Shown here one piece after another: positions 18,152 through 50,035 of a DNA stretch of 56,549 nt (position 1 is the first letter of the stretch; each line of letters starts with the position of its first letter). The notes under the pieces were generated by a model that worked only from the letters and a program-made list of their open reading frames with translations, searched no databases and had not been told where the DNA came from. A program made the position numbers and the translations under genes. Source of the DNA: Salisapilia sapeloensis CBS 127946 (taxonomy: Eukaryota > Protista > Oomycota); assembly GCA_023334545.1 (NCBI GenBank), contig JAADVB010000112.1, forward strand, positions 1-56,549, read 5' to 3'.

Positions 18152-18530
18152 GCTTCTGAAGAAAATGTGAGCATGGAAAGTCTAATTCTGGACGAAACCT
18201 CGGACAAGAGTGGATACTTGTATATTTGCGACCTAGGTACAGTCCACATGTAAATCAAGTACCGTGTCACGCCAGCTGACTCCATCGTCCCATTAAAAAG
18301 GATGGATGTGCATACTTAATGTAAGATGAACAAGCTCTAGTTTTATGAGTTGACATCCCATCCATCCCTAAGTCGACACAACACTCCTGAAAGCCGGAAC
18401 GAGCTGCAGAAGTCGACCCAGTCGTTGCCTACGCGACTCGTCCATTGACTCATTTGCATTCGTGACCGCCTCTGAAAGTTTATATCCTCGTCGCAATCAG
18501 TGTACCACATTCCAACTTGCACCGACACGA

Positions 18531-21300: not shown

Positions 21301-21421
21301 GCATAAATAGTGAGAATAGATAGGAAGTGAATGCAAAACGAACGCGTAATTGCTTTTCAAAGTACGATTCGAAAGGGACAAAAAGAAAATCTTATACATG
21401 TAGCTAAAAGCACTTGGTGTC

Positions 21422-24400
21422 TTACATGACGCCACAATTACCTTCTTTCCGCTCCTCCTTGGTCGATGCTGGTGAGCTTCGTGGCTGTTGTTGCTGTTGC
21501 TGGTTCTGCAGTACGTTCTTGAACTCGTAGTTCCGGCGGAGGTAGCCGAAGAGCAACGTCCTCTCTTTCTTGAGCACCTTAAGCGAATCGTCCACCACCT
21601 TCTTTAGCGCAGGATCGATCATCCGCGGGTCGTTCGTCGGTAGGTCATGTTCTTCCTGGTAGTTCATCACCTGCTCACTCGCCAGTTGGACGCGGTACGC
21701 CGCCTTGGAAACCCTCGAAGCAGCCACGTACGAAGCAGAGCCCTTGAGCGAGTGACTTTCGCGTCTCAACGTCGCGTAGTCGTTAATCTCATGCGCCTCA
21801 AAGATCTTGGCCATCACATTGCCGCAGTTGATGGCAAACTTCTCTAACAATTTCATGAACAGATCGTCCACGCCACCACATTGCTGGACACCACGTGAAA
21901 CATCCACCGGATCTCCCTCCGGAATCTCAATATCCATCGGACTAATCTTTGGTTTCGGCGTTGCTTCCTCCTTCGGACCAATCGTCGAGTTGATCTTCTC
22001 ACTCTGTGGTGCCTTGCTCTCCTCCGCAAGATTCAGCCCTTGCGGCGATTCCATCTTTCCTGCTGGATTGTACGCTGCTGCAGGAGACATCCTAGTGATA
22101 GCACTGTCGCTCATAGACCCTTTTCTCTTATCCTCTTCATCCTCCTCATCCTCTTCATCCACTTCGACTAGACCAGGGAAACGGAAGCTCTCGTTGCCGT
22201 TCGAGTGAATCGAGTCGGCCATGTCAGCGCTCTTCATCTTTCGAAGCACAGACTCACGAGGCGGCATCTCTCGCTTGAACGGCGGGTGACTCCACAGCGT
22301 CGGATCCTTCATATCGACAGTCGGTTTGACCTGGTCGTCCGCCGTCGTCGGCTGCAAGTTTCGATCCAACGTAGCAGGGAACGTCGTAGACGTCACGTCC
22401 GACTCCATCCAGTCTGGCGTCTCAATGATCGACCCATTACCATCTCGACGGAAGTTGAGAATGTCACTATTGGAAGTCGACTTGCTCGAACTGTTCGTAC
22501 CGAGACTAAAGATCGATGTAGCAGGCGCAGCAACGCGATATGTTCGTCTGTTGCCTTGGCGATTGATAGCCATCGGGTCATCCAACTCGAGATTAGAAAT
22601 GGCACGTGCTAAATCCAGCTGCTGCATGTGCTGGGACGCAGGTACCAACTTTCTCGAGTTGCTTTCAAATTTGTCCTCAAGCTGCTCGTTGTACTCGTCC
22701 ATCCCTCGGAAACTCCCTCGACGCTGCTTCTCGCTAAAGTCCGAGCTTGATCTCGAAACTTCCGGAGCAAACGTAATCGATTTCTTCGGTTTGGTTTCAG
22801 CCGAATTGGAGCCCAGGCTATGCCATTCCGCACTATAATGTTCAGGCGGGAACGCGTCGGGATCCTCATGGCGCATACAAGCAATCACACGTACGCGGAT
22901 CCATTGATGAATCGCCTTGAGCAACGTGTTCTTCGGAATGGGTTTCACCATGAACTCGTCCATGCCTGCATCGAGACACTTTTGCCGATCGCCACTCATC
23001 GCATACGCCGTGAGTCCAAGCACAGGAATGCGTGGTAGATGGTTGGTCGCCTCAAACTGACGAATGGCCGTAGCAGCAGCGTATCCGTCCATGACAGGCA
23101 TTTCGCAGTCCATAAAGATCATGTCAAAGCTCTCGTGATGAACCTTGTACGCTTCGACTGCATCTCTACCATTCACTTCCCACTGGAGCCTGTGATCTTC
23201 TTCCTGTAAGAAGCACTTGACCACTTCCCAATTGAACTCATTGTCTTCCACGACAAGGATGCTGACTTGATCCGGGATCGTGATGTCCGGGATATTCGCA
23301 CCATTCTTATTGACTTTTCCCGTGTCTGACGACACTGGTTCAAATGCCTGGTCTTGGTCCTTCGGTTCCGACTCTGGTGGTTCATCCTCGACACGGATGT
23401 TGCCGTTGTCGTTGAGCATACGCTGCGTCAGCATGTGCTTATACATCGGATCCACTTCATCATTCAGAAGGCGTACGACGACCGTGAAGAAAAAGTTACT
23501 ACCGACACTAAGCTCACTATCGACATCGATCTGACCGTCCATGAGTTCCACGAGCTGCTTACAAATAGCTAAGCCAAGACCAGACCCTGTCGGGTTATTC
23601 TGTCTTGTACGTTCGAGTTTCGTGAAGAGACTAAAGAGTCGCTGCTTTTCCTCCGCGTCCATACCGATGCCAGTATCAATGACTTGGAAGAGAAGCTTAC
23701 GGAACGTCGCGGGAAGCTCTGGCGCTCGAACCACACTGCACTTGACTGTCACGCCACCTTCATTCGTGAACTTGATGGCGTTCGACAATAGATTGAGCAG
23801 CACTTGACGCAGACGGAAGACATCTCCAATCGCATCTGACGGTACGTTCTTATCGCACTCCAATTCGAGCTTGAGACCACGATCCCGAGCTCGGAACTTG
23901 AAGATCTCGATCGAGTACTCTAGCAGGTCTTGCATTTCAAATGGTGCAGCAGAGATTTCGAGCTGCCCAGCCTCGATCTTGGACAGGTCGAGGATGTCGT
24001 TGATCAAGTTCAAGAGCAGACTACCGCTCACGTACGCCATGTTCACGTACCGCTGCGACGTTTCCTCCAGCTTGGCTTCCTTCAGCAGTTCCAGCATGCC
24101 CAAGACGCCATTCAACGGCGTCCGTAGCTCGTGACTAAAGGACGCCAAGAAGTTTACCTTGGCTGCTTCCATCTGCTTCCGCGCCGTGTAGTCCTGTCCG
24201 ACGCCAATGACGCCTCGGATGTTGCCGTGCATATCCTTCTTACTGGATGCATTCACCAGTAACAAGAGGAAGGCACCTCTCTTGGTCGTCATGGGCAGTT
24301 CCATTTCCCCGACGTCGATACCAATGAGCGCTTGATTGAGCAGTTGACGCACTTGCTTTCGACTCTCCGGGATGATAAACGTATGGACGAGAGAGAGACC

Positions 24401-27400
24401 GAGGACAGTCGATTTGTGATACCCTGTAATTTCTTCAATCTTCTGGTTCCACTCGTTGATACAGCCGTTCGTGTCGACACCAAAGATCGGGGCGTTGGCA
24501 GTATCAATAAGACGGAAGTACTCGTGCTCTTGGGCGATACGGTCAGTAATGTCCTGTCCGATGCCAACGACACCGACGATATTTCCATTCGAGTCGTTAC
24601 GTGGCGTAGCATTAAGCAGAATCTCGATGCGTGTACCAGGTCGTGTGATCAATGGGAACTCAAAGTTCGCTGTCTGGATGCCTTGCAATGCTTTCGACAG
24701 CACTTCAGCAACGATCGGTCTAAACTCTGGCGAGATAAACGTTTCCACCAGATTCTCTCCCATGACTTCCTGGATCGAGTAGTTGGTAATCTGAGCAGCC
24801 TTCTTATTCCAAATGTTCACACACATGTCTGCATCGACACCAAAGATCGGAGCATTGGCAGTGTCAATCAGTCGAGAGTACTCTTGTTCCTGCGCCAGCC
24901 TGTCCGTGATATCTTGCCCGATACCGACGACACCGACAATGTCTCCTTGCTGTCCAAACTTTGGTGTCGCATTCAACAGAATCTCCACTCGACGATTACC
25001 CTTGGTAATAAGCGGGAACTCAAAGTTTGCTGTCTCGACCCCGGACAGCGCTTGGGAAAAGACGTTGCGCACGAGGTCTCGATACTCTTCGGAAATGAAC
25101 TTGTTGATCAAGTCTTCTCCTAGCACCTCGGCGTTCGTGTACTGTGTAATGTGCGCTGCCTTGCGATTCCAAATGATCACCTTGTACTCCGAGTCGACAC
25201 CAAAGATCGGCGCGTTGGCCGTATCGATAAGACGAGAGTACTCTTGCTCTTGAGCAATGCGATCGGAGATGTCCTGTCCGATACCGACCATACCAATCAC
25301 CTGTCCATGCTCGTTGAATCGAGATGTGGCATTCAGCAAAATGTCAAGACGACGCCCGATGCGAGTAATAAGCGGGAACTCAAAGTTCGCCGTCTCCGCT
25401 CCACTCAGCGCCTTATCCAGCACAGACCCGACAGCCTCTCGGTAGTCTTCGGTGATGAATTTATCCACCAGGTTTTGTCCTAACACGTGGTCGGTAGTGT
25501 ACTGCGTAATCTCTGCAGCCTTTTTGTTCCAAATATTCACACAACCCTTCGAGTCGACACCAAAGATAGGAGCGTTAGCCGTATCAATCAGACGCGTATA
25601 CTCCTGCTCTTGGGCGATTCGATCCGTGATATCCTGTCCGATACCGACGATACCAACGATCTGTCCGTGCTGGTCGAATCGCGCAGCAGCATTCAGCAGG
25701 ATATTCAACTTGCGTTCTGTCTTGGTCATGAGCAGAATCTCAAAGTTGGATGACTCGTCACCTTGGAGAGCCTTTCGAACGACTTCATCTGCCAACGCAC
25801 GGTTCTCTTCCGCGATAAAGTTGTCTACGAGACTCTCGCCCATCACTTCTTCACGAGAGTATTGTGTAATGTGTGCAGCCTTGTTGTTCCAAATGTTCAA
25901 TCGACCGTCCATGTCGACACCAAAGATTGGAGCATTCGCCTTGTCAATGAGACGAGTGTACTCTTGTTCCTGTGCGATACGTTCGGTAATATCTTGACCG
26001 ATACCGACCATACCAATGACCTGACCATGCTCATTGTACCTAGGCGTTGCGTTCAACAGAATCTCGACACGACTACCTGCCTTGGTGATCAGCGGGAACT
26101 CAAAGTTGGCTGTTTCGAATCCAGCTAGAGCCTTGCGAAGGACAGAGCCGACAGCTTCCTTGTAGTCTTTCGTGATAAACTTGTTCACGAGGTGTTCGCC
26201 GACGACATCTCCGTTCGAGTATTGCGTAATCTCAGCAGCCTTTCGGTTCCAAATGTTCACAAGACCTTCCGAGTCGACACCAAAGATCGGAGCGTTAGCT
26301 GTGTCAATTAGACGAGTGTACTCTTGCTCCTGCGCGATGCGGTTCGTGATATCCTGACCGATGCCCACCATCCCCTTGACTCGACCATGTTCATTGTATC
26401 TCGATGTAGCATTCAGTAGAATCTCGACCCTTCGTCCTGCCTTGGTCATGAGTGGGAATTCAAAGTTCGCCGTCTCTTGACCTTCTAAAGCGTTACGAAG
26501 GACGAACCCGACGGCATCCTTGTATCCTTCTGTAATGAATTTGTTCACAAGGTGTTCGCCCATCACATCCTTGGACGTGTACTGTGTGATCTCTGCAGCC
26601 TTCCTATTCCAGATATTCACTCGGCCTTCTGCATCCACACCAAAGATCGGAGCATTGGCCGTATCAATCAGACGCGTATATTCTTGTTCCTGCGCTATTC
26701 GATCCGTGATATCTTGTCCGATACCAACCATACCAATCACTTGCCCGTGCTCATTGTATCTCGGCGTGGCATTCAGTAAGATCTCCACTCGTCTACCAGT
26801 CTTGGTCATGAGGGGGAACTCAAAGTTCGCTGTTTCTGCACCGCCTAGTGCCTTGCGGAGGACAGAACCGACTGCCTGCTTGTACCCTTCAGTGATAAAC
26901 TTGTTCACCAGGTGCTCTCCCATCACGTCGGACGGTGCGTGCTGTGTGATCTCGGCTGCCTTTCGGTTCCAAATGTTCACAAGACCTCTCGAATCGACAC
27001 CAAAGATTGGCGCATTAGCTGTATCAATAAGACGCGTATACTCCTGCTCTTGGGCGATTCGATCGGTAATGTCTTGACCGATACCGACCATACCCATCAC
27101 CTGCCCATGTTCATTGTACCTAGGCGTTGCGTTCAACAGAATCTCCAATCTACGTCCGACCTTGGTCATGAGTGGGAACTCAAAGTTGGCGGTCTCGACG
27201 TCTTCCAGCGCTTTACTTAGCACTGACGCTACTGCTTCCTTGTACCCCTCTGTAATAAACTTTTCTACGAGATTCTCCCCCATGACATCGTCATTTGTGT
27301 ACTGCGTGATCTCTGCAGCCTTCCTGTTCCAGATATTCACTCGTCCATTCGAGTCGACACCAAAGATCGGGGCGTTGGCAGTGTCTATCAAACGCGTATA

Positions 27401-30400
27401 CTCCTGTTCCTGTGCGATGCGGTCTGTAATATCCTGACCGATACCAACCATTCCTATCACTTGCCCATGCTCATTATACCTCGATGTAGCATTCAGTAGA
27501 ATCTCGACCCTTCGTCCTGCCTTGGTCATGAGTGGGAATTCAAAGTTCGCCGTCTCCTTTCCTTCCAACGCTTTGCTCAGGACGTATCCGACAGCTTCCT
27601 TGTAGTCATCCGTAATGAACTTATTCACAAGATGTTCGCCCATCACATCTTCATTCGAATATTGAGTAATCTCCGCTGCTTTGCGATTCCAAATGTTCAC
27701 AAGACCGTCTGCATCCATACCAAAGATCGGAGCATTCGCAGTGTCTATCAAACGAGTATACTCTTGTTCTTGCGCGATACGATCGGTGATATCTTGTCCG
27801 ATACCGACCATGCCTTTGACCTGTCCGTGCTCATTGTATCTCGGCGTGGCATTCAATAAGATCTCCACTCGTCTACCAGTCTTGGTCATGAGAGGGAACT
27901 CAAAGTTGGCCGTCTCCGTGCCGTTCAACGCCTTCTGAAGGACGTCTCCAACTGCCTCCTTATATCCTTCGGTAATAAACTTCTCCACCAAGTTTTCTCC
28001 CATGACATCGGATGGTGAGTGGAGTGTCACTTCGGCTGCCTTTCGATTCCAAATGTTCACACGTCCACTGGCATCCACACCAAAGATTGGCGCATTGGCC
28101 GTATCGATAAGACGTGTATACTCTTGTTCCTGTGCGATTCGATCGGTAATGTCTTGACCGATACCGACCACACCCTTCACTTCTCCTAGCTCATTATATC
28201 GTGAAGTAGCATTCAACAGAATCTCCACCCGCCTCCCTGTCTTGGTGATCAACGGGAATGCAAAGTTGGCCGTCTCGGAACCCAAGAGTGCTTTATTTAG
28301 CACAGATCCAACTGCCTGCTTGTATCCTTCCGTGATAAACTTCTCTACCAAGTGCTCGCCCATCACATCGGACGACGTATACTGCATGATCTCCGCAGCC
28401 TTCCTATTCCAGATATTCACTCGGCCTTCTGCATCCACACCAAAGATCGGAGCATTGGCCGTATCAATCAGACGCGTATACTCCTGTTCCTGCGCAATGC
28501 GATCCGTGATATCCTGACCGATACCAACCATCCCCTTGACCTCTCCAAGCTCATTATACCTCGACGTAGCATTCAGTAGAATCTCGACCCTTCGTCCTGC
28601 CTTGGTCATGAGTGGGAATTCAAAGTTCGCCGTCTCCTTCCCAGACAAAGCCTTGTCCAGGACAAAGCCCACGGCTTCCTTGTATCCTTCTGTAATGAAC
28701 TTTTCTACTAAGTTCTCTCCCATCACGTCTTTCGGTGTATACTGCGTGATTTCAGCAGCCTTTCGATTCCAGATATTCACTCGGCCGTCTTGGTCGACAC
28801 CAAAGATAGGGGCGTTGGCTGTATCAATAAGACGCGTGTACTCTTGTTCCTGCGCAATGCGATCGGTAATGTCCTGTCCGATACCGACCATGCCCTTGAC
28901 TTGTCCATGCTCGTTGAATCGAGATGTGGCATTCAGCAGAATCTCCACTCGCCTCCCAGTCTTGGTAATAAGCGGGAACTCAAAGTTGGCAGTCTCAGTA
29001 CCATCCAACGCTTTGTCCAGTACATACCCCACAGCCTTACGATAATCTTCCGTAATAAACTTTTCTACGAGATTCTCGCCCATGACATCGTCATTCGTAT
29101 ACTGCGTGATCTCGGCTGCTTTACGATTCCAGATATTCACAAGACCATCCGCATCGACACCAAAGATCGGGGCGTTCGCAGTGTCAATGAGTCGAGTAAA
29201 CTCCTGCTCTTGCGCCAGTCGTTCCGTAATGTCCTGTCCAATCCCGACGACACCGACGATCTGACCCATCTCGTTATACCTCGGTGTAGCGTTCAGCAGG
29301 ATCTCCACTCGCCGACCGGTCTTGGTCGTCAGTGGGAAGTCAAAGATAGCTGTTTGGGCGCCATCTAGAGCTTTGTTCAGCGCAGATTCCACTGCTTCTC
29401 GCGCATCTTCCGACACGAACTGCTGAACCAAGTCCTCTCCGACCACTTCGTCACCACTAAACTGCGTGATCTCGGCAGCCTTGCGGTTCCAAATCGTCAC
29501 GAGACCGTCCTTGTCGACACCAACGATAGGCGCATTCGCAGTGTCGATTAAACGAGAGTACTCTCGTTCTTGCATGATCCGGTCGGTAATGTCCTGTCCG
29601 ATACCGACAACACCGATGATCTCTCCCTGTTCATCATATCGAGGCGTCGCATTCAGTAGAATCTCCACACGTCGACCTGTGCGCGAGATAAGTGGGAACT
29701 CAAAGTTGGCTGTTTCGACGCCAACGAGTGCTTGCTCCAAGACGCCACCGACCTTCTCCTGATACTCTTTCGGAATAAAGCTTTCCACCAAGTTCGCACC
29801 GAGGACATCAAAGCCTGGATACTCTGTGATCCGAGCCGCCTTGCGATTCCAAATGTTCACAGACAAGTCTCGATCGACACCGAAGATCGGAGCATTGGCT
29901 GTGTCGATGAGACGAGTGTACTCTTGCTCCTGTGTACGTCGTTCCGTAATGTCTTGGCCGATACCGACGGCGCCGACAATGTTCCCAACATGATCCGACC
30001 GAGGCGTCGCGTTCAGCAATATAATTCGCCGCTGTCCAGATCTGGTCATGACTGGCATTTCAAAGTTCGCGGTCTCGTGTCCATCAAAGGCTTTCGATAG
30101 AATGTCAAAGAGCGCGCTCTTGAACTCATCCACGACCATGAAAGCAATGTTCTTGCCCATCATGTACTCGACAGGGTACTGTGTAATCGTCGCTGCTTTC
30201 TTATTCCAACTGGTGATCTTAAACTCCGAATCGACGCCAAAGATCGGTGCATTAGCCGTATCAATCAGACGTCGATGCTCCTGCTCTTGGATGATTCGAT
30301 CTGTAATGTCCTGGCCGATACCCACAGCGCCTGTGATGCGACCTAAGTGGTCAAACCATGGCGTGATGTTCAATAGCACTTCAAAGCGCTTTCCGCTCTT

Positions 30401-31456
30401 CTTTTTCAACGAAAACTCAAAGTTCGTCACTTCGTTTCCAATGTACGCTTCTTGGAAGGCTGCTGCAACTGCATCGCGGTATTCGACTGGTACGAGCAGC
30501 TCCACGAGATCCTTGCCCATCACTTCGTCCACCGAGTACTCGGTCGCTTGGCAGGACGACTGGTTGAAGATGACTGTCCGGCCTTCCATATCGACACCAA
30601 CGATATTCGTATTCGCAGAATCGATAAACTTTTCATACACTCGTTCCTTTGCTTTGCGTTCGGTAATATCATGACCGATGATCATGACGCCAAAGACGTC
30701 GCCATTCGCATCCACACGCGGCGTGAAGCTCACCATTAGATGCACTTCTTCCGTACGAGCAGATCGGAGGGGCATCTCCAGTTCTGGACTCGGCTTTACG
30801 AGCCGAACGCATTCTTCAATGTGACTGTAGATGACATCGTGGTACTCCTCTGGCATATCCCGAAGAATCGACTCACCAATCATCTCGGCAGACGTGTATC
30901 CGGTCAGCATCGACACACTTGGGTTCCACGCCGTTACGCGACCTTCCGTGTCTAGCTCGACAATGGATGCGCTGCCGTGGTTGACAACTTCGGCGTACTG
31001 TCGTTCATGGCCTGCCCAGTCCGTCACGTCCTGACCGATGGCGTACACGCCTACGATCTCATCTTTCCCACTTGTGCTGTCGATAATCGGCGTAAGATTT
31101 GTCCAAAAGTGGGCTTGTAAACCATCTGCCGTGACGATCCGTAGCGTCGTCTCGGCAGTCTCGACACCATCATGCAGTGCGAGCTCTAGACTCTTCCTCG
31201 CCTGTTCCCGCGCGTCTCGACCTGCAAATTGATCCAGCAGCGGCTGGCCTAGCACATGTGACGCTGGTATACTTGTCATAAACTCCATCTTCGAGTTCCA
31301 GAACGCGACTTTGCCATCTTTATCGACACCACAAGTCGGTGCCGTCGCGCTCGAAAGCACTTTAAAGAAAGCATCTGCCACGGGGGACTGGAAGAATTCG
31401 TCCCGTTCGCTTGCGAGAGCTGGCAACGCCAACGGCGTGCCAACTTCGGCGCTCAT
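21422..31456 (-). CDS. HK1: giant soluble hybrid histidine kinase, 20 PAS - HisKA - HATPase_c - receiver - HPt, C-terminal CaaX (3344 aa)
   Basis: Single ORF. H-box SFSHELRTPLNG; N box QVLLNLLSNAIKFT; G1 VIDTGIGM; G2 GSGLGLAIC; receiver VVEDN...IFMDCEMPVMDG...KP; HPt RESHSLKGSASYV. 20 PAS units counted; no TM segment seen. Confidence 0.96.
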   Translation of the reverse strand: MSAEVGTPLALPALASERDEFFQSPVADAFFKVLSSATAPTCGVDKDGKVAFWNSKMEFMTSIPASHVLGQPLLDQFAGRDAREQARKSLELALHDGVETAETTLRIVTADGLQAHFWTNLTPIIDSTSGKDEIVGVYAIGQDVTDWAGHERQYAEVVNHGSASIVELDTEGRVTAWNPSVSMLTGYTSAEMIGESILRDMPEEYHDVIYSHIEECVRLVKPSPELEMPLRSARTEEVHLMVSFTPRVDANGDVFGVMIIGHDITERKAKERVYEKFIDSANTNIVGVDMEGRTVIFNQSSCQATEYSVDEVMGKDLVELLVPVEYRDAVAAAFQEAYIGNEVTNFEFSLKKKSGKRFEVLLNITPWFDHLGRITGAVGIGQDITDRIIQEQEHRRLIDTANAPIFGVDSEFKITSWNKKAATITQYPVEYMMGKNIAFMVVDEFKSALFDILSKAFDGHETANFEMPVMTRSGQRRIILLNATPRSDHVGNIVGAVGIGQDITERRTQEQEYTRLIDTANAPIFGVDRDLSVNIWNRKAARITEYPGFDVLGANLVESFIPKEYQEKVGGVLEQALVGVETANFEFPLISRTGRRVEILLNATPRYDEQGEIIGVVGIGQDITDRIMQEREYSRLIDTANAPIVGVDKDGLVTIWNRKAAEITQFSGDEVVGEDLVQQFVSEDAREAVESALNKALDGAQTAIFDFPLTTKTGRRVEILLNATPRYNEMGQIVGVVGIGQDITERLAQEQEFTRLIDTANAPIFGVDADGLVNIWNRKAAEITQYTNDDVMGENLVEKFITEDYRKAVGYVLDKALDGTETANFEFPLITKTGRRVEILLNATSRFNEHGQVKGMVGIGQDITDRIAQEQEYTRLIDTANAPIFGVDQDGRVNIWNRKAAEITQYTPKDVMGENLVEKFITEGYKEAVGFVLDKALSGKETANFEFPLMTKAGRRVEILLNATSRYNELGEVKGMVGIGQDITDRIAQEQEYTRLIDTANAPIFGVDAEGRVNIWNRKAAEIMQYTSSDVMGEHLVEKFITEGYKQAVGSVLNKALLGSETANFAFPLITKTGRRVEILLNATSRYNELGEVKGVVGIGQDITDRIAQEQEYTRLIDTANAPIFGVDASGRVNIWNRKAAEVTLHSPSDVMGENLVEKFITEGYKEAVGDVLQKALNGTETANFEFPLMTKTGRRVEILLNATPRYNEHGQVKGMVGIGQDITDRIAQEQEYTRLIDTANAPIFGMDADGLVNIWNRKAAEITQYSNEDVMGEHLVNKFITDDYKEAVGYVLSKALEGKETANFEFPLMTKAGRRVEILLNATSRYNEHGQVIGMVGIGQDITDRIAQEQEYTRLIDTANAPIFGVDSNGRVNIWNRKAAEITQYTNDDVMGENLVEKFITEGYKEAVASVLSKALEDVETANFEFPLMTKVGRRLEILLNATPRYNEHGQVMGMVGIGQDITDRIAQEQEYTRLIDTANAPIFGVDSRGLVNIWNRKAAEITQHAPSDVMGEHLVNKFITEGYKQAVGSVLRKALGGAETANFEFPLMTKTGRRVEILLNATPRYNEHGQVIGMVGIGQDITDRIAQEQEYTRLIDTANAPIFGVDAEGRVNIWNRKAAEITQYTSKDVMGEHLVNKFITEGYKDAVGFVLRNALEGQETANFEFPLMTKAGRRVEILLNATSRYNEHGRVKGMVGIGQDITNRIAQEQEYTRLIDTANAPIFGVDSEGLVNIWNRKAAEITQYSNGDVVGEHLVNKFITKDYKEAVGSVLRKALAGFETANFEFPLITKAGSRVEILLNATPRYNEHGQVIGMVGIGQDITERIAQEQEYTRLIDKANAPIFGVDMDGRLNIWNNKAAHITQYSREEVMGESLVDNFIAEENRALADEVVRKALQGDESSNFEILLMTKTERKLNILLNAAARFDQHGQIVGIVGIGQDITDRIAQEQEYTRLIDTANAPIFGVDSKGCVNIWNKKAAEITQYTTDHVLGQNLVDKFITEDYREAVGSVLDKALSGAETANFEFPLITRIGRRLDILLNATSRFNEHGQVIGMVGIGQDISDRIAQEQEYSRLIDTANAPIFGVDSEYKVIIWNRKAAHITQYTNAEVLGEDLINKFISEEYRDLVRNVFSQALSGVETANFEFPLITKGNRRVEILLNATPKFGQQGDIVGVVGIGQDITDRLAQEQEYSRLIDTANAPIFGVDADMCVNIWNKKAAQITNYSIQEVMGENLVETFISPEFRPIVAEVLSKALQGIQTANFEFPLITRPGTRIEILLNATPRNDSNGNIVGVVGIGQDITDRIAQEHEYFRLIDTANAPIFGVDTNGCINEWNQKIEEITGYHKSTVLGLSLVHTFIIPESRKQVRQLLNQALIGIDVGEMELPMTTKRGAFLLLLVNASSKKDMHGNIRGVIGVGQDYTARKQMEAAKVNFLASFSHELRTPLNGVLGMLELLKEAKLEETSQRYVNMAYVSGSLLLNLINDILDLSKIEAGQLEISAAPFEMQDLLEYSIEIFKFRARDRGLKLELECDKNVPSDAIGDVFRLRQVLLNLLSNAIKFTNEGGVTVKCSVVRAPELPATFRKLLFQVIDTGIGMDAEEKQRLFSLFTKLERTRQNNPTGSGLGLAICKQLVELMDGQIDVDSELSVGSNFFFTVVVRLLNDEVDPMYKHMLTQRMLNDNGNIRVEDEPPESEPKDQDQAFEPVSSDTGKVNKNGANIPDITIPDQVSILVVEDNEFNWEVVKCFLQEEDHRLQWEVNGRDAVEAYKVHHESFDMIFMDCEMPVMDGYAAATAIRQFEATNHLPRIPVLGLTAYAMSGDRQKCLDAGMDEFMVKPIPKNTLLKAIHQWIRVRVIACMRHEDPDAFPPEHYSAEWHSLGSNSAETKPKKSITFAPEVSRSSSDFSEKQRRGSFRGMDEYNEQLEDKFESNSRKLVPASQHMQQLDLARAISNLELDDPMAINRQGNRRTYRVAAPATSIFSLGTNSSSKSTSNSDILNFRRDGNGSIIETPDWMESDVTSTTFPATLDRNLQPTTADDQVKPTVDMKDPTLWSHPPFKREMPPRESVLRKMKSADMADSIHSNGNESFRFPGLVEVDEEDEEDEEDKRKGSMSDSAITRMSPAAAYNPAGKMESPQGLNLAEESKAPQSEKINSTIGPKEEATPKPKISPMDIEIPEGDPVDVSRGVQQCGGVDDLFMKLLEKFAINCGNVMAKIFEAHEINDYATLRRESHSLKGSASYVAASRVSKAAYRVQLASEQVMNYQEEHDLPTNDPRMIDPALKKVVDDSLKVLKKERTLLFGYLRRNYEFKNVLQNQQQQQQPRSSPASTKEERKEGNCGVM
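24170..30250 (-). repeat. Coding tandem repeat, 360-nt (120-aa) PAS unit
   Basis: The c(a/g)aagat/caacgat anchor recurs exactly every 360 nt from 24481 to 29881 (16 copies); the next copy is 357 nt further on, at 30238. Confidence 0.97.
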
Positions 31457-44005: not shown

Positions 44006-44367
44006 CGGTGTCGCGATGTTGGTATGAAAAGTCGAATTCTAAGAAAAAGAAAGGAAAGAAAAGAGAACCCTTCAACTGACGTCCGTTTGTTCCGACTTGA
44101 ATTGGGTATGGTCGTTGTCGACCATCAGACCCTATCGCACGAACGCCATCCTCCCCGTCCATCACCGTGGTGTCGTCAGTAATTCACTTACGACATTGAG
44201 AGAAGTAGCTACCTCTTCAAGTAGTATACACGTCGGGGCTAACATCTCTGAAATTCGAAACAAGTAGGTCGGATTAATAGCAAGCCGCAGCTTCTTTTCT
44301 ATTTTCAAGTGACGCCAGTTTGTTCTCCGGCCTGACTTGCAATCCTTCTACGCACAAACACAAGAGC

Positions 44368-47300
44368 ATGGACTATGCCCTGGAAGAAGCTTGTGTTCCA
44401 GCCTTTTGCCTCACCGAAGATGGACAGGTCTCGCTCTGGAATAGAGCACTAGCACAGCTTACTGGCACCGACACGAAGGTAGTGGTAGGACGGCCACTCG
44501 AAGAACTTGTGCACCAAGACAGCACTGGAGATGTGCATCGGTACATCCGCGACCTACATTCCTCACCCCACAAGCCTCTCGAGAATGCTCGCCTCGAGTT
44601 CGTCCACTGCCGCACGGGAGCTTTGATCACACTACGGACGAATATGACGGCATCCTTGACGTTTGAGGATCGTGTCGACCGAATCGTCGCGATATGTGAT
44701 GTCTTACGATGCGTACGACCACTATCGGTCTCCCACGATTCGATCGACCTCCCTTCTTCCCCGATAATACCAGCAGCGAGCGACGATGAGAAACGATCTA
44801 TCAACGATCTACCTGAACTTGATGTGAGCAGCACTCCTCCATCCCGACAAGAAGCTCCAAACAATAATCGTTCTCGAAATGATCACATTGGCTTTCGTAG
44901 TGAACGTAGAGGTAGTATGCAAAGTGATGCCGAGTCGACCACATCTTCCTGCAAGATGTCGCCGTACGGAAAGGCGCTCATGGCTGCCAACGTACCTGTC
45001 TTTGAGCTCGACCACGACGCTCGTATCATGGTCTGGAACGCGAAAACCGCTTCTCTCACAGGCTTCAGTTCCGAAGGTGTGGTGGGTCAGTTGCTCACCG
45101 ACACGGTAGACGCATCTTCCAAAGACCGCTTCCAACACGCCTTCCAGACTGCTGTTGACACGCAGCGTGCTGGAGACGAGTTCGAGGTCTGTTTCACTGC
45201 GAATGACGGTAGCCACGCCGAAGTCATGCTGTCACTCTCGCCACAAGTAGATGATGACGGGCGAGTCATTGGCGTCATGGCGATCGGACAAGACGTCAAG
45301 CACCAGTCGAGCAACGATAGCAGTATGATCAACACGGCGAACGCTCCGATCTTTGGGATTGATATTGAAGGCCGGATCGTCATTTTTAATAAGAAAGCTT
45401 CGAAAGTCACCGAGTTTTCGCCGGAGGAAGTGCTAGGCTGCAATCTCATCGAGACCTTGGCGCAAGGAAGTGTACGTGAAGCTGTCGCGAACGTCTTTGA
45501 TGCAGCTGTGAAAGGCCAGGCGACGGCTAACTTTGAGTTCCCACTCGCGACACGAAGTGGTAAGCGGATAAGTATCCTTCTGAATGTAACGCCTCGATAC
45601 GACCATCACGGACGTGTGATTGGTGCTGTGGGGATCGGCCAGGACATCACGGAACGAGTGGTGCAGGAAGAAGAACTCCGTCGACTCATCTACACTGCCA
45701 ATGCGCCTATCGTCGGTGTTGATAAAGACTATAAGATCAACATTTGGAATCGAAAAGCGACGACTATTACAGAGTATAACAGTGATGAAGCCATTGGCTA
45801 TCAGCTGACAGAGTTCCTGCCGGAAGGACATAAAGAAAGCGTCCAGCATGTCTTCCAACAAGCACTGGAAGAAGCAAAGGAGACGGCGCGATTCGAGTTT
45901 CCGCTTGTGACAAAAGAAGGACGAGAGCTCAAGATCCTGTTGAACGCAACGCCGAGGTTTGACCATAAAGGACGTATCATCGGTGTCGTCGGCATCGGAC
46001 ATGACTTTACAGACTTGAAAGCGCAGGAGCAAGAATATGCTCGCTTGATCGAGACGGCGAATGCGCCTATCTTTGGCGTCGATGTAGACTTTTCCATTAC
46101 GATTTGGAATCGAAAAGCTGCTGAAGTCACAGGGTACTCTGCAGAAGAAGCGTTGGGGACAGACTTGATCCAGGAGTTCATTCCGGATGAATATAAAGTA
46201 CAAGTCCGTGGCGTTCTATCTCTCGCATTGGATGGAGAGGAGACGGCGAACTTTGAGTTTCCGTTGGTCACGAGAGGGGGAAGGAGGGTTGAAGTGCTAT
46301 TGAATGCGACGCCAAGATATGATGAGCGACAGAATATTATCGGAGTGGTCGGTATTGGACAAGATATTACAGCTCGAATCGCTCAAGAGCAAGAGTACAG
46401 GAGACTCATCGATACTGCCAACGCTCCGATCTTCGGTGTCGATCAAGATGGACTTGTCACTATCTGGAATAACAAAGCAGCAGAGATTACACAGTACACG
46501 AATGAGGATGTCATGGGCGAACACCTCGTGAATAAGTTCATCACAGATGACTACAAGGAAGCAGTGGCGTCCGTCTTGAGCAAGGCGTTGGAAGGCACAG
46601 AGACCGCTAACTTTGAGTTCCCACTTATGACAAAAGGAGGGCGTAGGGTCGAGATCCTGCTGAACGCTACGCCGAGGTATAATGAGCATGGGCAAGTGAT
46701 AGGAATGGTTGGTATCGGTCAGGATATTACCGACCGCATCGCACAGGAGCAAGAGCATATGAAGCTAATTGAGAATGCCAATGCTCCTATCTTTGGTGTG
46801 AACGTTGATGGTTTCGTGACGATTTGGAACCAGAAGATGGCGGATATTACGCAATACACCAAGGTCGAGGCCATCGGCAAGTACTTTGTCAACAGTTTTG
46901 TCGAACCGACGTACCGTGGTATCCTCGCGGACGTCTTATCGGATGCCCAACGATCCGCTTTTGCTGCTTCAAATGTTGAGATCGTCTTGACGACCAAGAC
47001 TGGCAGGCGAGCGAATATCTTGATGAATGCAACCGTACGCTTTGGACAGCATGGAGAAGTGGAAGGTGTCGTTGGTATCGGACAAGACATTACCGATCGA
47101 CTAGCGCAAGAGCAGGAATACACTCGTCTTATCGATACAGCCAACGCTCCAATCTTTGGTGTGGACGACAAAGGTCTGGTGACGATTTGGAATAAGAAAG
47201 CAGCGCAGTTGACACAGTACAAGACACGAGAAGTCGTGGGTCAGAACCTCGTCGAGACGTTTGTGTCGCCCAAGCACCGACCAGCCGTGAAGCAAGTGTT

Positions 47301-49944
47301 TGCCAAGGCACTCGAAGGTATCCAAACGGCAAACTTTGACTTTCCATTGATCACCAAGTCTGGTACACGAGTGGATGTTTTGCTGAATGCAACACCAAGG
47401 AATGATCCGCATGGAAATATCGTCGGCGTCGTGGGCATCGGTCAGGATATCACCGATAGGATTGCTCAGGAGCACGAGTACTACCGTCTGATCGACAGTG
47501 CGAATGCTCCGATTTTTGGTGTCGATCCTTTTGGTTGTGTGAATGAATGGAATCAGAAGATTGGACAATTGACTGGGTATGCGAAGAAAGATGTGGTGGG
47601 AGAATCACTCGTCGAACGCTTCGTGGCGCAGGATTCAGCCGATCAAGTGTGGAAACAACTACGACAGGCACTTATCGGTATTGATGTTGGCGAGATGGAG
47701 CTGCCGATCCATACCAAGAGCGGTCGGTCGCTCTTATTGCTTGTGAACGCGTCTAGTAAGATGGACTTGAGTGGAAATATTGTTGGTGTCATTGGCGTCG
47801 GACAGGACTACACGGCAAAGAAACGGATGGAGGCTGCGAGAGTCAACTTCCTCGCTTCCTTTAGTCATGAGTTACGCACACCGTTAAATGGCGTGCTTGG
47901 TATGCTCGAGTTGATTCGAAACGATACGTTGGAGAGAAAGACACGCAAGAGATACGTGGACATGGCGTACATCAGCGGCAGTCTCCTCTTGAATCTTATA
48001 AACGATATCCTGGATTTGTCCAAGATCGAAGCTGGTCACATGGAAATCAACTATGATCCATTCCATCTAGATGATCTACTCTCGTACGTCATTGAGCTGT
48101 TCAAGTTCAAGGCAAAAGAAAAGAAAATTGATCTAGTGCTCGAAGCAGGTGACCTTCCTCATGCACTCATTGGAGACGTTGGTAGGCTGCGTCAGATTCT
48201 ACTCAACTTTTTATCCAACGCCATTAAGTTTACAAAGAAAGGAAGTATTACAGTGAAGTGTCATACGGTATCAGCAACGGATGTGCCACCAGAGAAGAAG
48301 AGATTTCTGTTCGAAGTGGTGGATACGGGCATCGGCATGACCTCAGAGGAAATGGCGCATCTCTTTGAAATCTTTTTCAAAGTTAACAGTATGAAGAAGG
48401 ATAACCCGACTGGATCTGGACTTGGTCTTGCCATTTGTAAGCAGTTGGTCGAGCTCATGGGTGGACAGATTGGCGTCGAGAGCGAAAAATTTGTAGGTAG
48501 TAACTTTTACTTCATCGTGGACTTGGAAGTGGCCAATGAAGAGAGCACATCATCCTTGTTCCGACCGGAGAATGCCGACACGAAGCCTGCCATCCACCGA
48601 GCTGTATCTGACGATCTCCATGCAAGCGTCCTTGTCGTGGAGGACAATGACTTTAACTGGGAAATCGTATGTGCTTTCCTCTGCAACAACGGCGAAGACC
48701 ATTTCGTCCGGTGGGAAGCGAATGGTCAGGCAGCACTTGAAGCGTATAAGAAGCACCACGAGTGCTTCGATCTTGTGCTCATGGACTGCGAAATGCCTGT
48801 CATGGACGGCTACAACGCCACACGATCCATCCGTAAGTATGAAAAAGATAATGGTCTTCCGAGGATGCCAGTCTTAGGTCTCACTGCCTACGCCATGCAC
48901 GGGGATCGGCAAAAGTGTCTGGATGCAGGTATGGATGAGTTCCTGGTGAAGCCGATCGGTCAAACAACTCTCCTTCAAGCCATCCACACTTGGAAAGGCA
49001 AGAAGAGAACTACGCGCGGCTTGATAGATCGAATGGCGGCTGGGCTTCAACGAGCGTCACAGTACCAACAGCATATAACGATCGATAAAGCAATCTCTGC
49101 TCTCGAGCTGGAAGATCCCAGCCGAGTTGCAAAGCATGGAGATACGCTCATGATCGCGCATGAACCTTCAGGCATTCCGACGACAGGCTCGTTGTACTCA
49201 TCCGAAGGAAGTGACAGTAGGTCCCAATACCAAGACTCAGATCTTTCCAGGTCGAGATCGTGGACTCAGATCGGGTCTCGATCTCTTCCTGCTGGATGCA
49301 AATTCCCTTTTAAAGATGCGCATGGCAACGTTGGCACGAGCACGATGCCTGCTTCAGAGATAAAGGTACAGAACTCTAGTCGTTCCAGGCGTCATACGTT
49401 CTTCCCTTACCTATCCAAATCTCAGGGTGTGAATCAGATCAAGGAGGGTATTGAAGAGAATGAGCCGGACCCTCCGTTGCCTGTTATGCTTGCTGTCAAT
49501 CCACTTGATAGTGTCGTTCTTCCCGACGGAGATCCGATCAACTTTGCAAAGGGTGTGTCCCAATGTGGAGGCAAAGAACCCCTCTTTATGACGTTCTTGG
49601 AGAATTATAATCGTCAAGTAGGAGGCAAAATGGCTCAGATCCAAAATGCCTTCGAACAGAAAGACTGGCAGACAGTCAAGTCGACTAGTCATTCACTCAA
49701 AGGCATGTCGGCCTATGCAGCCGCAGAGCGTGTGGAGAAGAGCGCCCAACGACTAGAACTGGCATCGACAAGACTCATGTCTTCTTTAGAGCAAGTGGGA
49801 TCGGTGGAGAGAGAGATGCGGTTGCTCCGGGACGAGTACGAGCATTTGAAAGGATACTTAAGACGAAATTTCGAGTTTGGGGCGCCGGAAACGAAAAAGA
49901 AGGTGGATCAAAAGGACGATGGCTTTGCATGCGCGCTGATGTGA
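44368..49944 (+). CDS. HK2: soluble hybrid histidine kinase, 9 PAS - HisKA - HATPase_c - receiver - HPt, C-terminal CaaX; paralog of HK1
   Basis: SFSHELRTPLNG, NFLSNAIKFT, DTGIGM, GSGLGLAIC, LVLMDCEMPVMDG, and HPt STSHSLKGMSAY; first ATG at 44368; 9 PAS units counted. Confidence 0.95.
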   Translation: MDYALEEACVPAFCLTEDGQVSLWNRALAQLTGTDTKVVVGRPLEELVHQDSTGDVHRYIRDLHSSPHKPLENARLEFVHCRTGALITLRTNMTASLTFEDRVDRIVAICDVLRCVRPLSVSHDSIDLPSSPIIPAASDDEKRSINDLPELDVSSTPPSRQEAPNNNRSRNDHIGFRSERRGSMQSDAESTTSSCKMSPYGKALMAANVPVFELDHDARIMVWNAKTASLTGFSSEGVVGQLLTDTVDASSKDRFQHAFQTAVDTQRAGDEFEVCFTANDGSHAEVMLSLSPQVDDDGRVIGVMAIGQDVKHQSSNDSSMINTANAPIFGIDIEGRIVIFNKKASKVTEFSPEEVLGCNLIETLAQGSVREAVANVFDAAVKGQATANFEFPLATRSGKRISILLNVTPRYDHHGRVIGAVGIGQDITERVVQEEELRRLIYTANAPIVGVDKDYKINIWNRKATTITEYNSDEAIGYQLTEFLPEGHKESVQHVFQQALEEAKETARFEFPLVTKEGRELKILLNATPRFDHKGRIIGVVGIGHDFTDLKAQEQEYARLIETANAPIFGVDVDFSITIWNRKAAEVTGYSAEEALGTDLIQEFIPDEYKVQVRGVLSLALDGEETANFEFPLVTRGGRRVEVLLNATPRYDERQNIIGVVGIGQDITARIAQEQEYRRLIDTANAPIFGVDQDGLVTIWNNKAAEITQYTNEDVMGEHLVNKFITDDYKEAVASVLSKALEGTETANFEFPLMTKGGRRVEILLNATPRYNEHGQVIGMVGIGQDITDRIAQEQEHMKLIENANAPIFGVNVDGFVTIWNQKMADITQYTKVEAIGKYFVNSFVEPTYRGILADVLSDAQRSAFAASNVEIVLTTKTGRRANILMNATVRFGQHGEVEGVVGIGQDITDRLAQEQEYTRLIDTANAPIFGVDDKGLVTIWNKKAAQLTQYKTREVVGQNLVETFVSPKHRPAVKQVFAKALEGIQTANFDFPLITKSGTRVDVLLNATPRNDPHGNIVGVVGIGQDITDRIAQEHEYYRLIDSANAPIFGVDPFGCVNEWNQKIGQLTGYAKKDVVGESLVERFVAQDSADQVWKQLRQALIGIDVGEMELPIHTKSGRSLLLLVNASSKMDLSGNIVGVIGVGQDYTAKKRMEAARVNFLASFSHELRTPLNGVLGMLELIRNDTLERKTRKRYVDMAYISGSLLLNLINDILDLSKIEAGHMEINYDPFHLDDLLSYVIELFKFKAKEKKIDLVLEAGDLPHALIGDVGRLRQILLNFLSNAIKFTKKGSITVKCHTVSATDVPPEKKRFLFEVVDTGIGMTSEEMAHLFEIFFKVNSMKKDNPTGSGLGLAICKQLVELMGGQIGVESEKFVGSNFYFIVDLEVANEESTSSLFRPENADTKPAIHRAVSDDLHASVLVVEDNDFNWEIVCAFLCNNGEDHFVRWEANGQAALEAYKKHHECFDLVLMDCEMPVMDGYNATRSIRKYEKDNGLPRMPVLGLTAYAMHGDRQKCLDAGMDEFLVKPIGQTTLLQAIHTWKGKKRTTRGLIDRMAAGLQRASQYQQHITIDKAISALELEDPSRVAKHGDTLMIAHEPSGIPTTGSLYSSEGSDSRSQYQDSDLSRSRSWTQIGSRSLPAGCKFPFKDAHGNVGTSTMPASEIKVQNSSRSRRHTFFPYLSKSQGVNQIKEGIEENEPDPPLPVMLAVNPLDSVVLPDGDPINFAKGVSQCGGKEPLFMTFLENYNRQVGGKMAQIQNAFEQKDWQTVKSTSHSLKGMSAYAAAERVEKSAQRLELASTRLMSSLEQVGSVEREMRLLRDEYEHLKGYLRRNFEFGAPETKKKVDQKDDGFACALM
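45320..47820 (+). repeat. Coding tandem repeat of PAS units 3-9 in HK2 (360/363-nt spacing)
   Basis: NAP codons start at 45340, 45700, 46060, 46420, 46780, 47143 and 47503. Confidence 0.93.
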
Positions 49945-50035
49945 GTTTGGACGTAGTAGGCAAGCGACAAGGCGTACTTGAAGGCAGTTTCTAATTTGTA
50001 AAACAGTTTAACATGATAGTTTTTGCATGCGATAT

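What the first reader, a model, noticed from the sequence alone, without database searches (positions are those of the whole stretch)
21422..21436. HK1 ends in a CaaX prenylation box (CGVM), mirrored by HK2 (CALM)
Seen: the tails after HPt are otherwise unalignable (EERKEGNCGVM* versus KKKVDQKDDGFACALM*), yet both place Cys at -4 and Met last, with Lys/Arg residues upstream. Established: CaaX with X = Met is a farnesyltransferase substrate. Inference: these TM-less kinases are membrane-anchored by a C-terminal lipid next to the HPt output domain. I know of no described prenylated histidine kinase.
Basis: partly seen in the sequence, partly recalled or inferred. Interest (0 to 1): 0.8.

Follow-up and report, generated by a model that had tools for sequence, protein, structure and literature searches.

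The report
Lipid-anchor tail on oomycete histidine kinases
Both giant sensor kinases in this window end in the four-residue signal (Cys-x-aliphatic-Met) that directs attachment of a farnesyl lipid, and the same signal ends every complete relative examined across the oomycetes, pointing to a class of lipid-anchored histidine kinase that I could not find described in the literature searched.

Summary
HK1 (21422-31456, minus strand, 3344 aa) ends CGVM-stop. HK2 (44320-49944, plus strand, 1874 aa) ends CALM-stop. Both are TM-less multi-PAS hybrid histidine kinases with a C-terminal HPt domain.

- All 76 family members that carry the end-of-HPt motif (68 distinct tails; Saprolegniales, Albugo, Pythium, Phytophthora, downy mildews, Lagenidium) have Cys at exactly -4. 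Of these, 75 end in Met and one metagenomic member ends CIIS.
- Position -3 is as variable as the disordered tail and -2 is V/I/L. This matches farnesyltransferase specificity.
- The one apparent exception is a gene-model fusion that still contains CSVM.
- The nearest haptophyte relatives and 49 of 50 bacterial homologues lack the Cys.
- Contigs of RNA-labelled runs are colinear with the genome through both stop codons.
- AlphaFold2 places the motif at the end of a low-confidence tail behind a confident HPt bundle.

Prenylation itself, the lipid type and the target membrane are not shown. There is no polybasic or palmitoyl second signal.

No paper found mentions a prenylated histidine kinase. 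I rate it a new variant of known kinds.

The scan's earlier notes on this genome only list other putative CaaX proteins and STE24/Rce1-like genes. These are unchecked.

The parts
21422..31456 (-). HK1: 3344-aa intron-less ORF. Architecture is 20 PAS repeats, HisKA, HATPase_c, REC, a long linker, HPt, a variable tail and CaaX.
   Evidence: ORF list; Pfam; H-box HELRTP and HPt HSLKG intact; nests in the peronosporalean long-class clade, SH-aLRT 99.
21425..21436 (-). HK1 CaaX box CGVM. The Cys codon is TGT at 21434-21436. The stop codon TAA is at 21422-21424.
21437..21520 (-). HK1 variable tail, predicted disordered: 28 aa between the end-of-HPt motif GYLRRNYEF and the CaaX box.
   Evidence: A1 alignment shows no conservation; AF2 pLDDT is 45-54 with no secondary structure.
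21530..21901 (-). HK1 HPt helical bundle. The phospho-accepting His of HSLKG is at 21752-21754.
   Evidence: Pfam HPt; AF2 pLDDT >90; the top Foldseek PDB hits are all HPt proteins; PDB profile hits to MtHPt1 and the Shewanella HPt.
24131..24133 (-). HK1 H-box histidine (HELRTP), the autophosphorylation site.
44320..49944 (+). HK2: 1874-codon ORF (first ATG at 44368). Architecture is 9 PAS repeats, HisKA, HATPase_c, REC, a linker, HPt, a tail and CaaX.
49930..49941 (+). HK2 CaaX box CALM. The Cys codon is TGC. The stop codon TGA is at 49942-49944.
49879..49929 (+). HK2 variable tail of 17 aa (GAPETKKKVDQKDDGFA) between GYLRRNFEF and the CaaX box.
49621..49878 (+). HK2 HPt domain. The His of HSLKG is at 49690-49692.
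   Evidence: Pfam HPt E=8e-10
21350..21421 (-). Probable HK1 3'UTR of about 72 nt. In run X5, contigs of RNA-labelled data change at 21350-21352 from depth 125.9 (HK1 side) to 26.6 (the convergent neighbour gene).
   Evidence: table 8

Best explanation
HK1 and HK2 are soluble, multi-PAS hybrid histidine kinases of the oomycete family HisKA-HATPase-REC-linker-HPt. Their flexible C-terminal tail ends in a genuine, selected CaaX box. The inferred sequence of events is as follows. Protein farnesyltransferase attaches a C15 farnesyl to the Cys at -4. A CaaX protease (Rce1 or Ste24 type) removes the last three residues. The new C-terminal farnesyl-Cys is carboxyl-methylated. Histidine kinases act as dimers through the HisKA/DHp domain, so each kinase would carry two lipids. 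These would tether the HPt output domain, on a 20-48-residue leash, to a membrane surface. The last phosphotransfer step (HPt to a response regulator) would then occur at a membrane, while the PAS array senses cytosolic signals. There is no polybasic stretch and no conserved upstream Cys, so the target membrane cannot be predicted. By analogy with farnesyl-only Ras mutants, endomembranes or weak, reversible binding would be the default. Shown here: the motif, its invariance, its FTase-like constraint pattern, the absence of TM helices, intact catalytic residues, the disordered tail, and transcript colinearity. Inferred: lipid attachment, lipid type, processing, and membrane tethering.
For: The motif is present in both genes. 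In the family, 76/76 proteins with the end-of-HPt motif in their last 90 residues have Cys at -4; 75 have X=M and 1 has X=S. There are 68 distinct tails of 20-48 aa. Per-position entropy is 0 bits at -4, 3.0 bits at -3 (12 residue types, the same as the disordered tail), 1.5 bits at -2 (V/I/L plus one T), and 0.1 bits at -1. The motif is conserved in Saprolegniales, Albuginales, Pythiales and Peronosporales and in three paralogue classes. A divergent marine-metagenome member has CIIS, with a different X. The Ras-based CXXX screen shows X=M and an aliphatic a2 as positive FTase determinants (PMC10320760). The only apparent exception, P0033, is a fused gene model that still contains ...NACSVM. 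Controls: 1/50 bacterial homologues have C at -4, and the nearest haptophyte HK-HPt ends inside the last HPt helix with no Cys. CVIM, CVVM and CAIM, which occur in family members, are experimentally farnesylated by human FTase (PMC11152559). AF2 gives an HPt bundle with pLDDT >90 and a tail with pLDDT 45-54. There is no TM segment. The transcripts are colinear with the genome. Oomycetes encode M48 and M79 CaaX proteases and lamins with a classical CaaX (PMC8035641 and PMC4448529).
Against: There is no biochemical or localisation evidence for any family member. The one functional study (P. sojae HK knock-out, PMC10072465) says nothing about lipidation. FTase, GGTase-I and ICMT genes of this organism could not be searched; only unchecked earlier notes mention STE24 and Rce1-like genes. 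A single farnesyl on a 200-370 kDa protein gives weak membrane affinity. The usual second signal is absent: median K+R is 2 of 20, and an upstream Cys occurs in 6/76. The run type 'RNA' is only guessed by the tool, and two of the runs have contigs that cross the intergenic gap, so DNA carry-over is not excluded.
Confidence: 0.8

Rival explanations
1. The Cys is prenylated, but the lipid serves mainly as a handle for a protein partner rather than as a stable membrane anchor. The partner could be a PDE6-delta- or RhoGDI-like prenyl-binding chaperone or another signalling protein. The lipid could also serve regulated delivery to a compartment such as the zoospore flagellum.
For: There is no second membrane signal. 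Positions -5 and -6, which FTase does not read, are also constrained (P/A and N/G; entropy 1.8 and 2.1 bits against about 3 upstream), which hints at a further reader of the tail. A P. sojae family member is expressed in zoospores and cysts and is needed for chemotaxis (PMC10072465).
Against: No partner is known. The -5/-6 pattern is largely class-specific (NAC versus GPC) and could be shared ancestry within paralogue classes. Dimeric kinases would carry two lipids, which may suffice for membrane binding (inference).
Confidence: 0.12
2. The motif is used, but the lipid is mainly geranylgeranyl (C20) added by GGTase-I, not farnesyl.
For: CaaM sequences such as CVIM, CIIM and CAIM are alternately prenylated by yeast and human GGTase-I when FTase is missing (PMC11152559).
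Against: In the same study these sequences were fully modified by FTase, and GGTase-I acted as a back-up. The only X variant in the family is Ser (CIIS), and CaaS/Q sequences were not modified by GGTase-I. X is never Leu or Phe in 76 sequences.
Confidence: 0.06
3. The conserved terminal C-x-aliphatic-M has a function without lipid. Examples are a metal or redox-sensitive Cys/Met pair, a C-terminal degron, or a docking motif for the receiver domain.
For: Cys and Met are both metal- and oxidant-reactive. A second invariant Cys (QCGG) sits just before the HPt domain.
Against: The Cys is always exactly fourth from the end despite tails of 20-48 residues. The free -3, aliphatic -2 and M (once S) -1 pattern is what FTase requires (PMC10320760), and no other known reader of C-termini that I am aware of requires it. 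The tail is predicted disordered.
Confidence: 0.02

Closest known systems
Oomycete multi-PAS hybrid histidine kinases with fused HPt (Albugo laibachii HK1/HK2 in Kabbara et al. 2018, PMC6324907; P. sojae Ps130388 in PMC10072465)
   Same: Same family. The domain order is identical (PAS repeats, HisKA, HATPase_c, REC, HPt). HK1 nests inside the peronosporalean clade at up to 65% identity over the core. Both Albugo proteins also end in CaaX: CALM and CVLM.
   Different: The published descriptions call them cytoplasmic or do not discuss localisation, and they do not mention the CaaX box or prenylation. HK1 has more PAS units (20) than most members. HK2 sits on a long branch.
Canonical farnesylated CaaX proteins (K-Ras4B CVIM, N-Ras CVVM, lamin B CAIM)
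   Same: The C-terminal tetrapeptide class is the same. Several family members carry exactly these tetrapeptides, which human FTase modifies (tetrapeptide counts). The motif sits on a flexible tail.
   Different: The cargo is a 1900-3300-aa histidine kinase, not a small GTPase or a lamin. There is no polybasic or palmitoyl second signal as in Ras, and no NLS context as in lamins.
Prenylated Ser/Thr kinases (LKB1/STK11, farnesylated at Cys433, PMC3898322; rhodopsin kinase GRK1, from my own knowledge)
   Same: A protein kinase is given a C-terminal isoprenoid instead of a transmembrane segment.
   Different: The kinase superfamily is unrelated (eukaryotic protein kinase fold versus the GHKL/HisKA two-component fold). 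In the oomycete proteins the lipid sits next to the phosphotransfer output domain (HPt), not the catalytic domain.
Transmembrane sensor histidine kinases with HPt (ArcB, BarA/GacS, TorS type) and plant or fungal hybrid HKs
   Same: The same four-step phosphorelay module is present, with HPt fold matches to the Shewanella, ArcB and BarA HPt domains, Ypd1 and AHPs.
   Different: Those kinases are anchored, where anchored at all, by N-terminal transmembrane helices that also sense. Here there is no TM helix, and the putative anchor is a post-translational lipid at the opposite end. The bacterial homologues lack Cys at -4 in 49/50 cases.
Haptophyte PAS-HK-REC-HPt kinases (Prymnesium parvum, P0277)
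   Same: These are the nearest non-oomycete relatives of the HPt domain in a search of 1.84 billion representatives, and they have a similar hybrid architecture.
   Different: They end in the last HPt helix (...AIASKMQS), with no disordered tail and no Cys. The tail plus CaaX therefore looks like an addition in the oomycete lineage.

Membership tests
CaaX-type protein prenylation substrate (FTase) | Cysteine exactly four residues from the C-terminus | tested here: met
   CGVM-stop and CALM-stop; 76/76 relatives.
CaaX-type protein prenylation substrate (FTase) | a2 (-2) aliphatic, uncharged; a1 (-3) tolerant | tested here: met
   -2 is V in HK1 and L in HK2. In the family -2 is V/I/L in 67 of 68 distinct tails. 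-3 takes 12 residue types. This matches the screen-derived rules (PMC10320760).
CaaX-type protein prenylation substrate (FTase) | X residue of the FTase-preferred set (M, S, Q, A, C) rather than L/F | tested here: met
   X is M in both window proteins. In the family it is M in 75 and S in 1, never L or F. CaaM sequences are fully modified by human FTase (PMC11152559).
CaaX-type protein prenylation substrate (FTase) | Accessible, flexible C-terminus | tested here: met
   AF2 gives the last ~30 residues pLDDT 45-54 with no secondary structure, behind an HPt bundle with pLDDT >90. This is a prediction only.
CaaX-type protein prenylation substrate (FTase) | Covalent isoprenoid on the Cys, aaX cleavage, carboxyl methylation | not testable with these tools
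   This needs labelling or mass spectrometry.
CaaX-type protein prenylation substrate (FTase) | The organism has FTase and CaaX-processing enzymes | not tested
   The rest of the genome is not searchable here. The literature reports M48 and M79 CaaX proteases in oomycetes and CaaX lamins. Earlier AI notes mention STE24 and Rce1-like genes in this genome (unchecked).
Hybrid histidine kinase with fused HPt (four-step phosphorelay) | HisKA with H-box His, HATPase_c, REC, and HPt with HxxKG | tested here: met
   All Pfam domains score above their gathering cut-offs in both proteins. HELRTP and HSLKG are present. The HPt fold is confirmed.
Oomycete multi-PAS HK-HPt family | Groups with oomycete HKs to the exclusion of bacterial homologues; shares the pre-HPt motif IPEGDP..GV.QCGG and the end motif GYLRRNFxF | tested here: met
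   The tree has an oomycete clade with SH-aLRT 100. HK1 lies inside the peronosporalean subclade (SH-aLRT 99). HK2 is on a long branch at the base. The motifs are invariant in A1.
Ras-type two-signal plasma-membrane targeting | Polybasic stretch or palmitoylatable Cys just upstream of the CaaX | tested here: not met
   Net charge of the 20 upstream residues has a median of +1 (range -5 to +2). K+R has a median of 2. An extra upstream Cys occurs in 6/76.

The most novel reading that the evidence does not exclude
Oomycetes anchor their only sensor histidine kinases not by transmembrane helices but by a conserved farnesyl group placed beside the HPt output domain. The final phosphotransfer is thereby confined to a particular membrane, possibly the plasma or flagellar membrane of zoospores, where a P. 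sojae member is needed for chemotaxis. It would also be coupled to isoprenoid supply and to prenyl-binding chaperones. Stand-alone HPt proteins of heterotrich ciliates carry a GGTase-type CaaX-like end, so lipidated phosphorelay components may have arisen more than once in eukaryotes.
Probability: 0.3. Interest if true: 0.8.

Novelty: new variant of a known kind. Interest (0 to 1): 0.66.

Why it matters
Two-component signalling is textbook-defined by transmembrane or soluble kinases. A lipid-anchored histidine kinase is a third way of placing the relay in the cell, and I found none described.

In oomycetes these are essentially the only histidine kinases. Albugo has two, and both carry the motif. 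One family member controls zoospore chemotaxis and cyst germination in a major crop pathogen.

A conserved farnesylation site gives a concrete, cheap experimental handle on where and how this poorly understood pathway works. The handle is a Cys-to-Ser change, farnesyltransferase inhibitors, or tail-GFP reporters.

It also adds a very large, non-GTPase client to the eukaryotic prenylome.

The motif can be used to check gene models. Every 'exception' in public annotations turned out to be a truncated or fused model.

Tried and rejected
(1) Chance or annotation artefact: rejected by the 76/76 conservation and by transcript colinearity.

(3) N-terminal myristoylation or TM helices as alternative anchors: none found. 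The N-termini are MSAEV... and MDYAL..., and the maximum hydropathy is 1.2.

(4) Reading the tail of a close relative (organism B) from run X6: its contigs stop at 21480, upstream of the tail, so nothing was learned.

(5) Looking for FTase notes in the same genome: none exist. Only unchecked notes on STE24 and Rce1-like genes and on other CaaX candidates were found.

(6) Retrieving yeast screen scores for CGVM: the stored supplement is cut before CG.. entries, and I did not interpret the heat-map values for CALM, CAVM or CCVM because the columns are not defined in the legend.

(7) Literature on FTase in Phytophthora: the hits concerned squalene synthase or were unrelated.

(8) Ciliate HPt follow-up: only one further homologue was found, too few for a claim.

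(9) Placement of HK2: it sits on a long branch at the base of the oomycete clade. I did not resolve whether it is an orthologue of the ~2000-aa class.

(10) The organism was not identified beyond 'peronosporalean-like oomycete absent from the protein database'. The best HK2 hits are 34-41% identical over the C-terminal region. Related words occur in a salt-marsh metatranscriptome.
Full report
**The observation.** Window 21422-21436 read on the minus strand is TGT GGC GTC ATG TAA. The 3344-aa ORF 21422-31456 therefore ends ...EERKEGNCGVM-stop. The second large ORF, 44320-49944 on the plus strand (1874 codons, first ATG at 44368), ends TGC GCG CTG ATG TGA, that is ...KKKVDQKDDGFACALM-stop.

**What the genes are.** Pfam finds 20 (HK1) and 9 (HK2) PAS repeats followed by HisKA, HATPase_c, a receiver domain and an HPt domain, all above the gathering cut-offs. 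The H-box (HELRTP) and the HPt phospho-histidine motif (HSLKG) are intact in both. Neither protein has a hydrophobic stretch compatible with a transmembrane helix: the best 19-residue Kyte-Doolittle mean is 1.2. Neither starts with Met-Gly.
- The best database matches are all oomycete hybrid histidine kinases: Aphanomyces, Saprolegnia, Thraustotheca, Pythium, Globisporangium, Lagenidium, Albugo, Phytophthora, Bremia, Plasmopara, Peronospora, Hyaloperonospora and Peronosclerospora.
- None is near-identical, so the organism itself is not in that collection.
- In a maximum-likelihood tree of the HisKA-to-HPt region, with the last 12 residues left out, the oomycete proteins form one clade (SH-aLRT 100).
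- HK1 nests in its peronosporalean part (SH-aLRT 99; up to 65% identity).
- HK2 sits on a long branch at the base, and its placement is unsure.
- This is the family that Kabbara et al. described from Albugo as multi-PAS kinases with a fused HPt (PMC6324907).

**Gene-model check.** Contigs of runs of the same organism that the tool labels 'RNA?' are colinear with the genome from 21350 to 24000 without any joint near the 3' end.
- In run X5 one contig (depth 125.9) ends at 21350, 72 nt beyond the HK1 stop.
- It abuts a contig of the convergent neighbour gene with depth 26.6, as expected for two transcripts.
- All sampled 31-mers of 49560-49995, which spans the HK2 stop, are held by four such runs.
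- Caveat: the RNA label is a guess, and in two runs one contig crosses the intergenic gap.
- Independent support for both stops comes from homology, because the orthologues stop at the same place.

**The comparative test.** I collected every protein returned by two searches (a word-seeded phmmer search and a profile search of 1.84 billion cluster representatives) that carries the conserved end-of-HPt motif G[YF][LMF][RKQ]RN[FY]xF within its last 90 residues, plus the two window proteins. This gives 76 proteins and 68 distinct tails.
- All 76 have Cys at exactly -4. Of these, 75 end in Met and one ends in Ser.
- The tail between the motif and the Cys varies from 20 to 48 residues in total length and is essentially unalignable (A1).
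- Anchored at the C-terminus, column entropy is about 3-3.7 bits from -20 to -7, 0 bits at -4, 3.0 bits at -3 (12 residue types), 1.5 bits at -2 (V 36, I 17, L 14, T 1) and 0.1 bit at -1.
- A free a1, an aliphatic a2 and a fixed X is the pattern a farnesyltransferase substrate is expected to show. In the Ras-based screen of all 8000 CXXX sequences, an aliphatic a2 and M at X are the positive determinants, while a1 carries few restrictions (PMC10320760).
- The motif is present in Saprolegniales as well as Albugo, Pythium-like genera and Peronosporaceae.
- It is present in all three paralogue classes seen in Phytophthora: about 2000 aa ending NAC[VA]VM, about 2900 aa ending GPCG[IV]M, and about 1300 aa ending GPCCVM. 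It therefore predates both the crown radiation and the duplications.
- The single X variant is a divergent member on a marine metagenome contig (L001) that ends CIIS. The anchor Cys and the aliphatic residues are kept while X changes.
- Ten oomycete-like hits lacked Cys at -4. Nine end before or inside the HPt domain, or lack it, and are truncated models or other proteins. The tenth, P0033, reads ...NACSVM and then runs on into an EF-hand protein, which is a fused gene model.
- Controls: 1 of 50 bacterial hybrid-kinase homologues has Cys at -4.
- Controls: the nearest non-oomycete relatives of this HPt domain, including a Prymnesium parvum PAS-HisKA-HATPase-REC-HPt kinase, end in the last HPt helix with neither tail nor Cys.

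**Structure.** AlphaFold2 on the last 170 residues of HK1, with A1 as alignment, gives a confident helical bundle (pLDDT above 90 for residues 12-135). Its best PDB matches are all HPt proteins or domains: Chaetomium HPt, the Shewanella HPt domain, Ypd1 and plant AHPs, with TM-score by target up to 0.75. The last ~30 residues have pLDDT 45-54 and no secondary structure. The CaaX box therefore sits at the end of a flexible leash, as prenyltransferases need.

**How it most likely works.**
- Shown: a clade-wide, position-exact, FTase-shaped motif on a flexible tail of TM-less, catalytically intact kinases.
- Established from the literature: CVIM, CVVM and CAIM, which occur in family members, are farnesylated by human FTase, and CaaM sequences can be geranylgeranylated as a back-up (PMC11152559).
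- Established from the literature: oomycetes encode the M48 (Ste24) and M79 (Rce1) CaaX proteases (PMC8035641) and lamins with a classical CaaX (PMC4448529).
- Inferred: farnesylation of Cys -4, removal of the last three residues, and carboxyl methylation.
- Inferred: because histidine kinases dimerise through HisKA, two lipids per kinase hold the HPt domain at a membrane surface, so that phosphotransfer to the response regulator happens there.
- Which membrane cannot be said. The 20 residues before the Cys carry a median of two basic residues and a net charge of about +1, and only 6 of 76 tails have another Cys, so the Ras-type second signals are absent.
- Positions -5 (P or A) and -6 (N or G) are more constrained than the rest of the tail. 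This may reflect shared ancestry within paralogue classes or an additional reader of the tail.
- A P. sojae family member is expressed in zoospores and cysts, and its disruption impairs chemotaxis and cyst germination (PMC10072465). This gives a phenotype against which a Cys-to-Ser allele could be tested.

**Rivals.**
- A prenyl group used mainly as a protein-binding or trafficking handle is compatible with all the data and differs only in the role of the lipid (about 0.12).
- Geranylgeranyl instead of farnesyl is possible for CaaM. It is disfavoured by the CIIS variant and by the complete absence of Leu or Phe at X (about 0.06).
- A lipid-free role of the Cys/Met pair does not explain the exact -4 register or the free -3 position (about 0.02).
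- Chance is excluded.

**Comparison with what is known, and novelty.** The kinases are members of the known oomycete multi-PAS HK-HPt family, and the motif is a canonical CaaX box. The combination is what is new. Full-text searches found no report of a prenylated histidine kinase or HPt protein. The searches combined histidine kinase with CaaX, farnesylation, prenylated or prenylation, and CaaX with Phytophthora. The two papers that describe these oomycete kinases do not mention the motif. The library holds open-access papers and preprints only, so this is not proof of absence. Prenylated Ser/Thr kinases exist (LKB1, PMC3898322; GRK1 from my own knowledge), but they belong to an unrelated fold. 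I therefore class the finding as a new variant of known kinds.

**Earlier notes of the scan.** Notes on this genome list other putative CaaX proteins, two STE24 copies and an Rce1-family gene. I could not check them and use them only as leads.

Noticed in passing
P0204 (Blepharisma stoltei, 227 aa), P0275 (242 aa), P0187 (207 aa); not in the window: Three stand-alone HPt proteins of heterotrich-ciliate type share a conserved C-terminus ...[DE][IL]NK[QY]WRC-x-[IM]-[IFL], with Cys at -4 and X = I, F or L. This is a geranylgeranyltransferase-I-type CaaX-like end. Lipidated HPt proteins may therefore exist independently in ciliates.
   Followed up: partly
P0245, P0269, P0270 (383 aa, metagenomic); not in the window: Another HPt-containing protein cluster ends ...GKEGGSCCCIII, a Cys-rich CaaX-like end preceded by a lysine-rich stretch.
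   Followed up: no
L001:1-645 (ENA metagenome contig, 3011 nt): This is a divergent, AT-rich family member whose HPt and tail end in CIIS. An in-frame stop lies about 10 codons upstream of the conserved IEIPEGDP motif, so the upstream part is either separated by a small intron or broken.
   Followed up: partly
window 21872-21934 (-) and 49483-49560 (+), just upstream of each HPt domain: A motif I-x-IPEGDP[VI][DN]Y.LGV.QCGG precedes the HPt domain in all 20 aligned family members. D, P, G, V, Q and a Cys are invariant. Its function is unknown, and the invariant Cys is the only other fully conserved Cys in this region.
   Followed up: no
P0033 (Nothophytophthora sp.), P0063, P0065, P0070, P0062: Public gene models of family members that lack the CaaX end are all truncated, or in the case of P0033 fused past the stop into an EF-hand protein. 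The terminal CxxM is a practical check of gene-model completeness for this family.
   Followed up: yes
window 22944-23113: Second contigs of higher depth in the RNA-labelled runs match 22944-22990 and 23081-23113, with 90 diverged bases between. This most likely reflects cross-matching of a paralogous kinase transcript in the conserved receiver region (tables 5 and 8).
   Followed up: no
window 21300-21422: HK1 and the convergent upstream-listed ORF 18517-21300 (+) have stop codons only 121 nt apart. In run X5 the contigs of the two genes meet at 21350-21352, implying very short 3'UTRs of about 50 and 72 nt.
   Followed up: partly
runs X6-X11, X17 (organism B) and X9 (salt-marsh metatranscriptome): A related organism shares 5-28% of the 31-mers of the HK1 3' region, with about 96% identity where laid. 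A salt-marsh metatranscriptome holds 10% of them. This suggests an estuarine or marine habitat for the source organism or its relatives.
   Followed up: no
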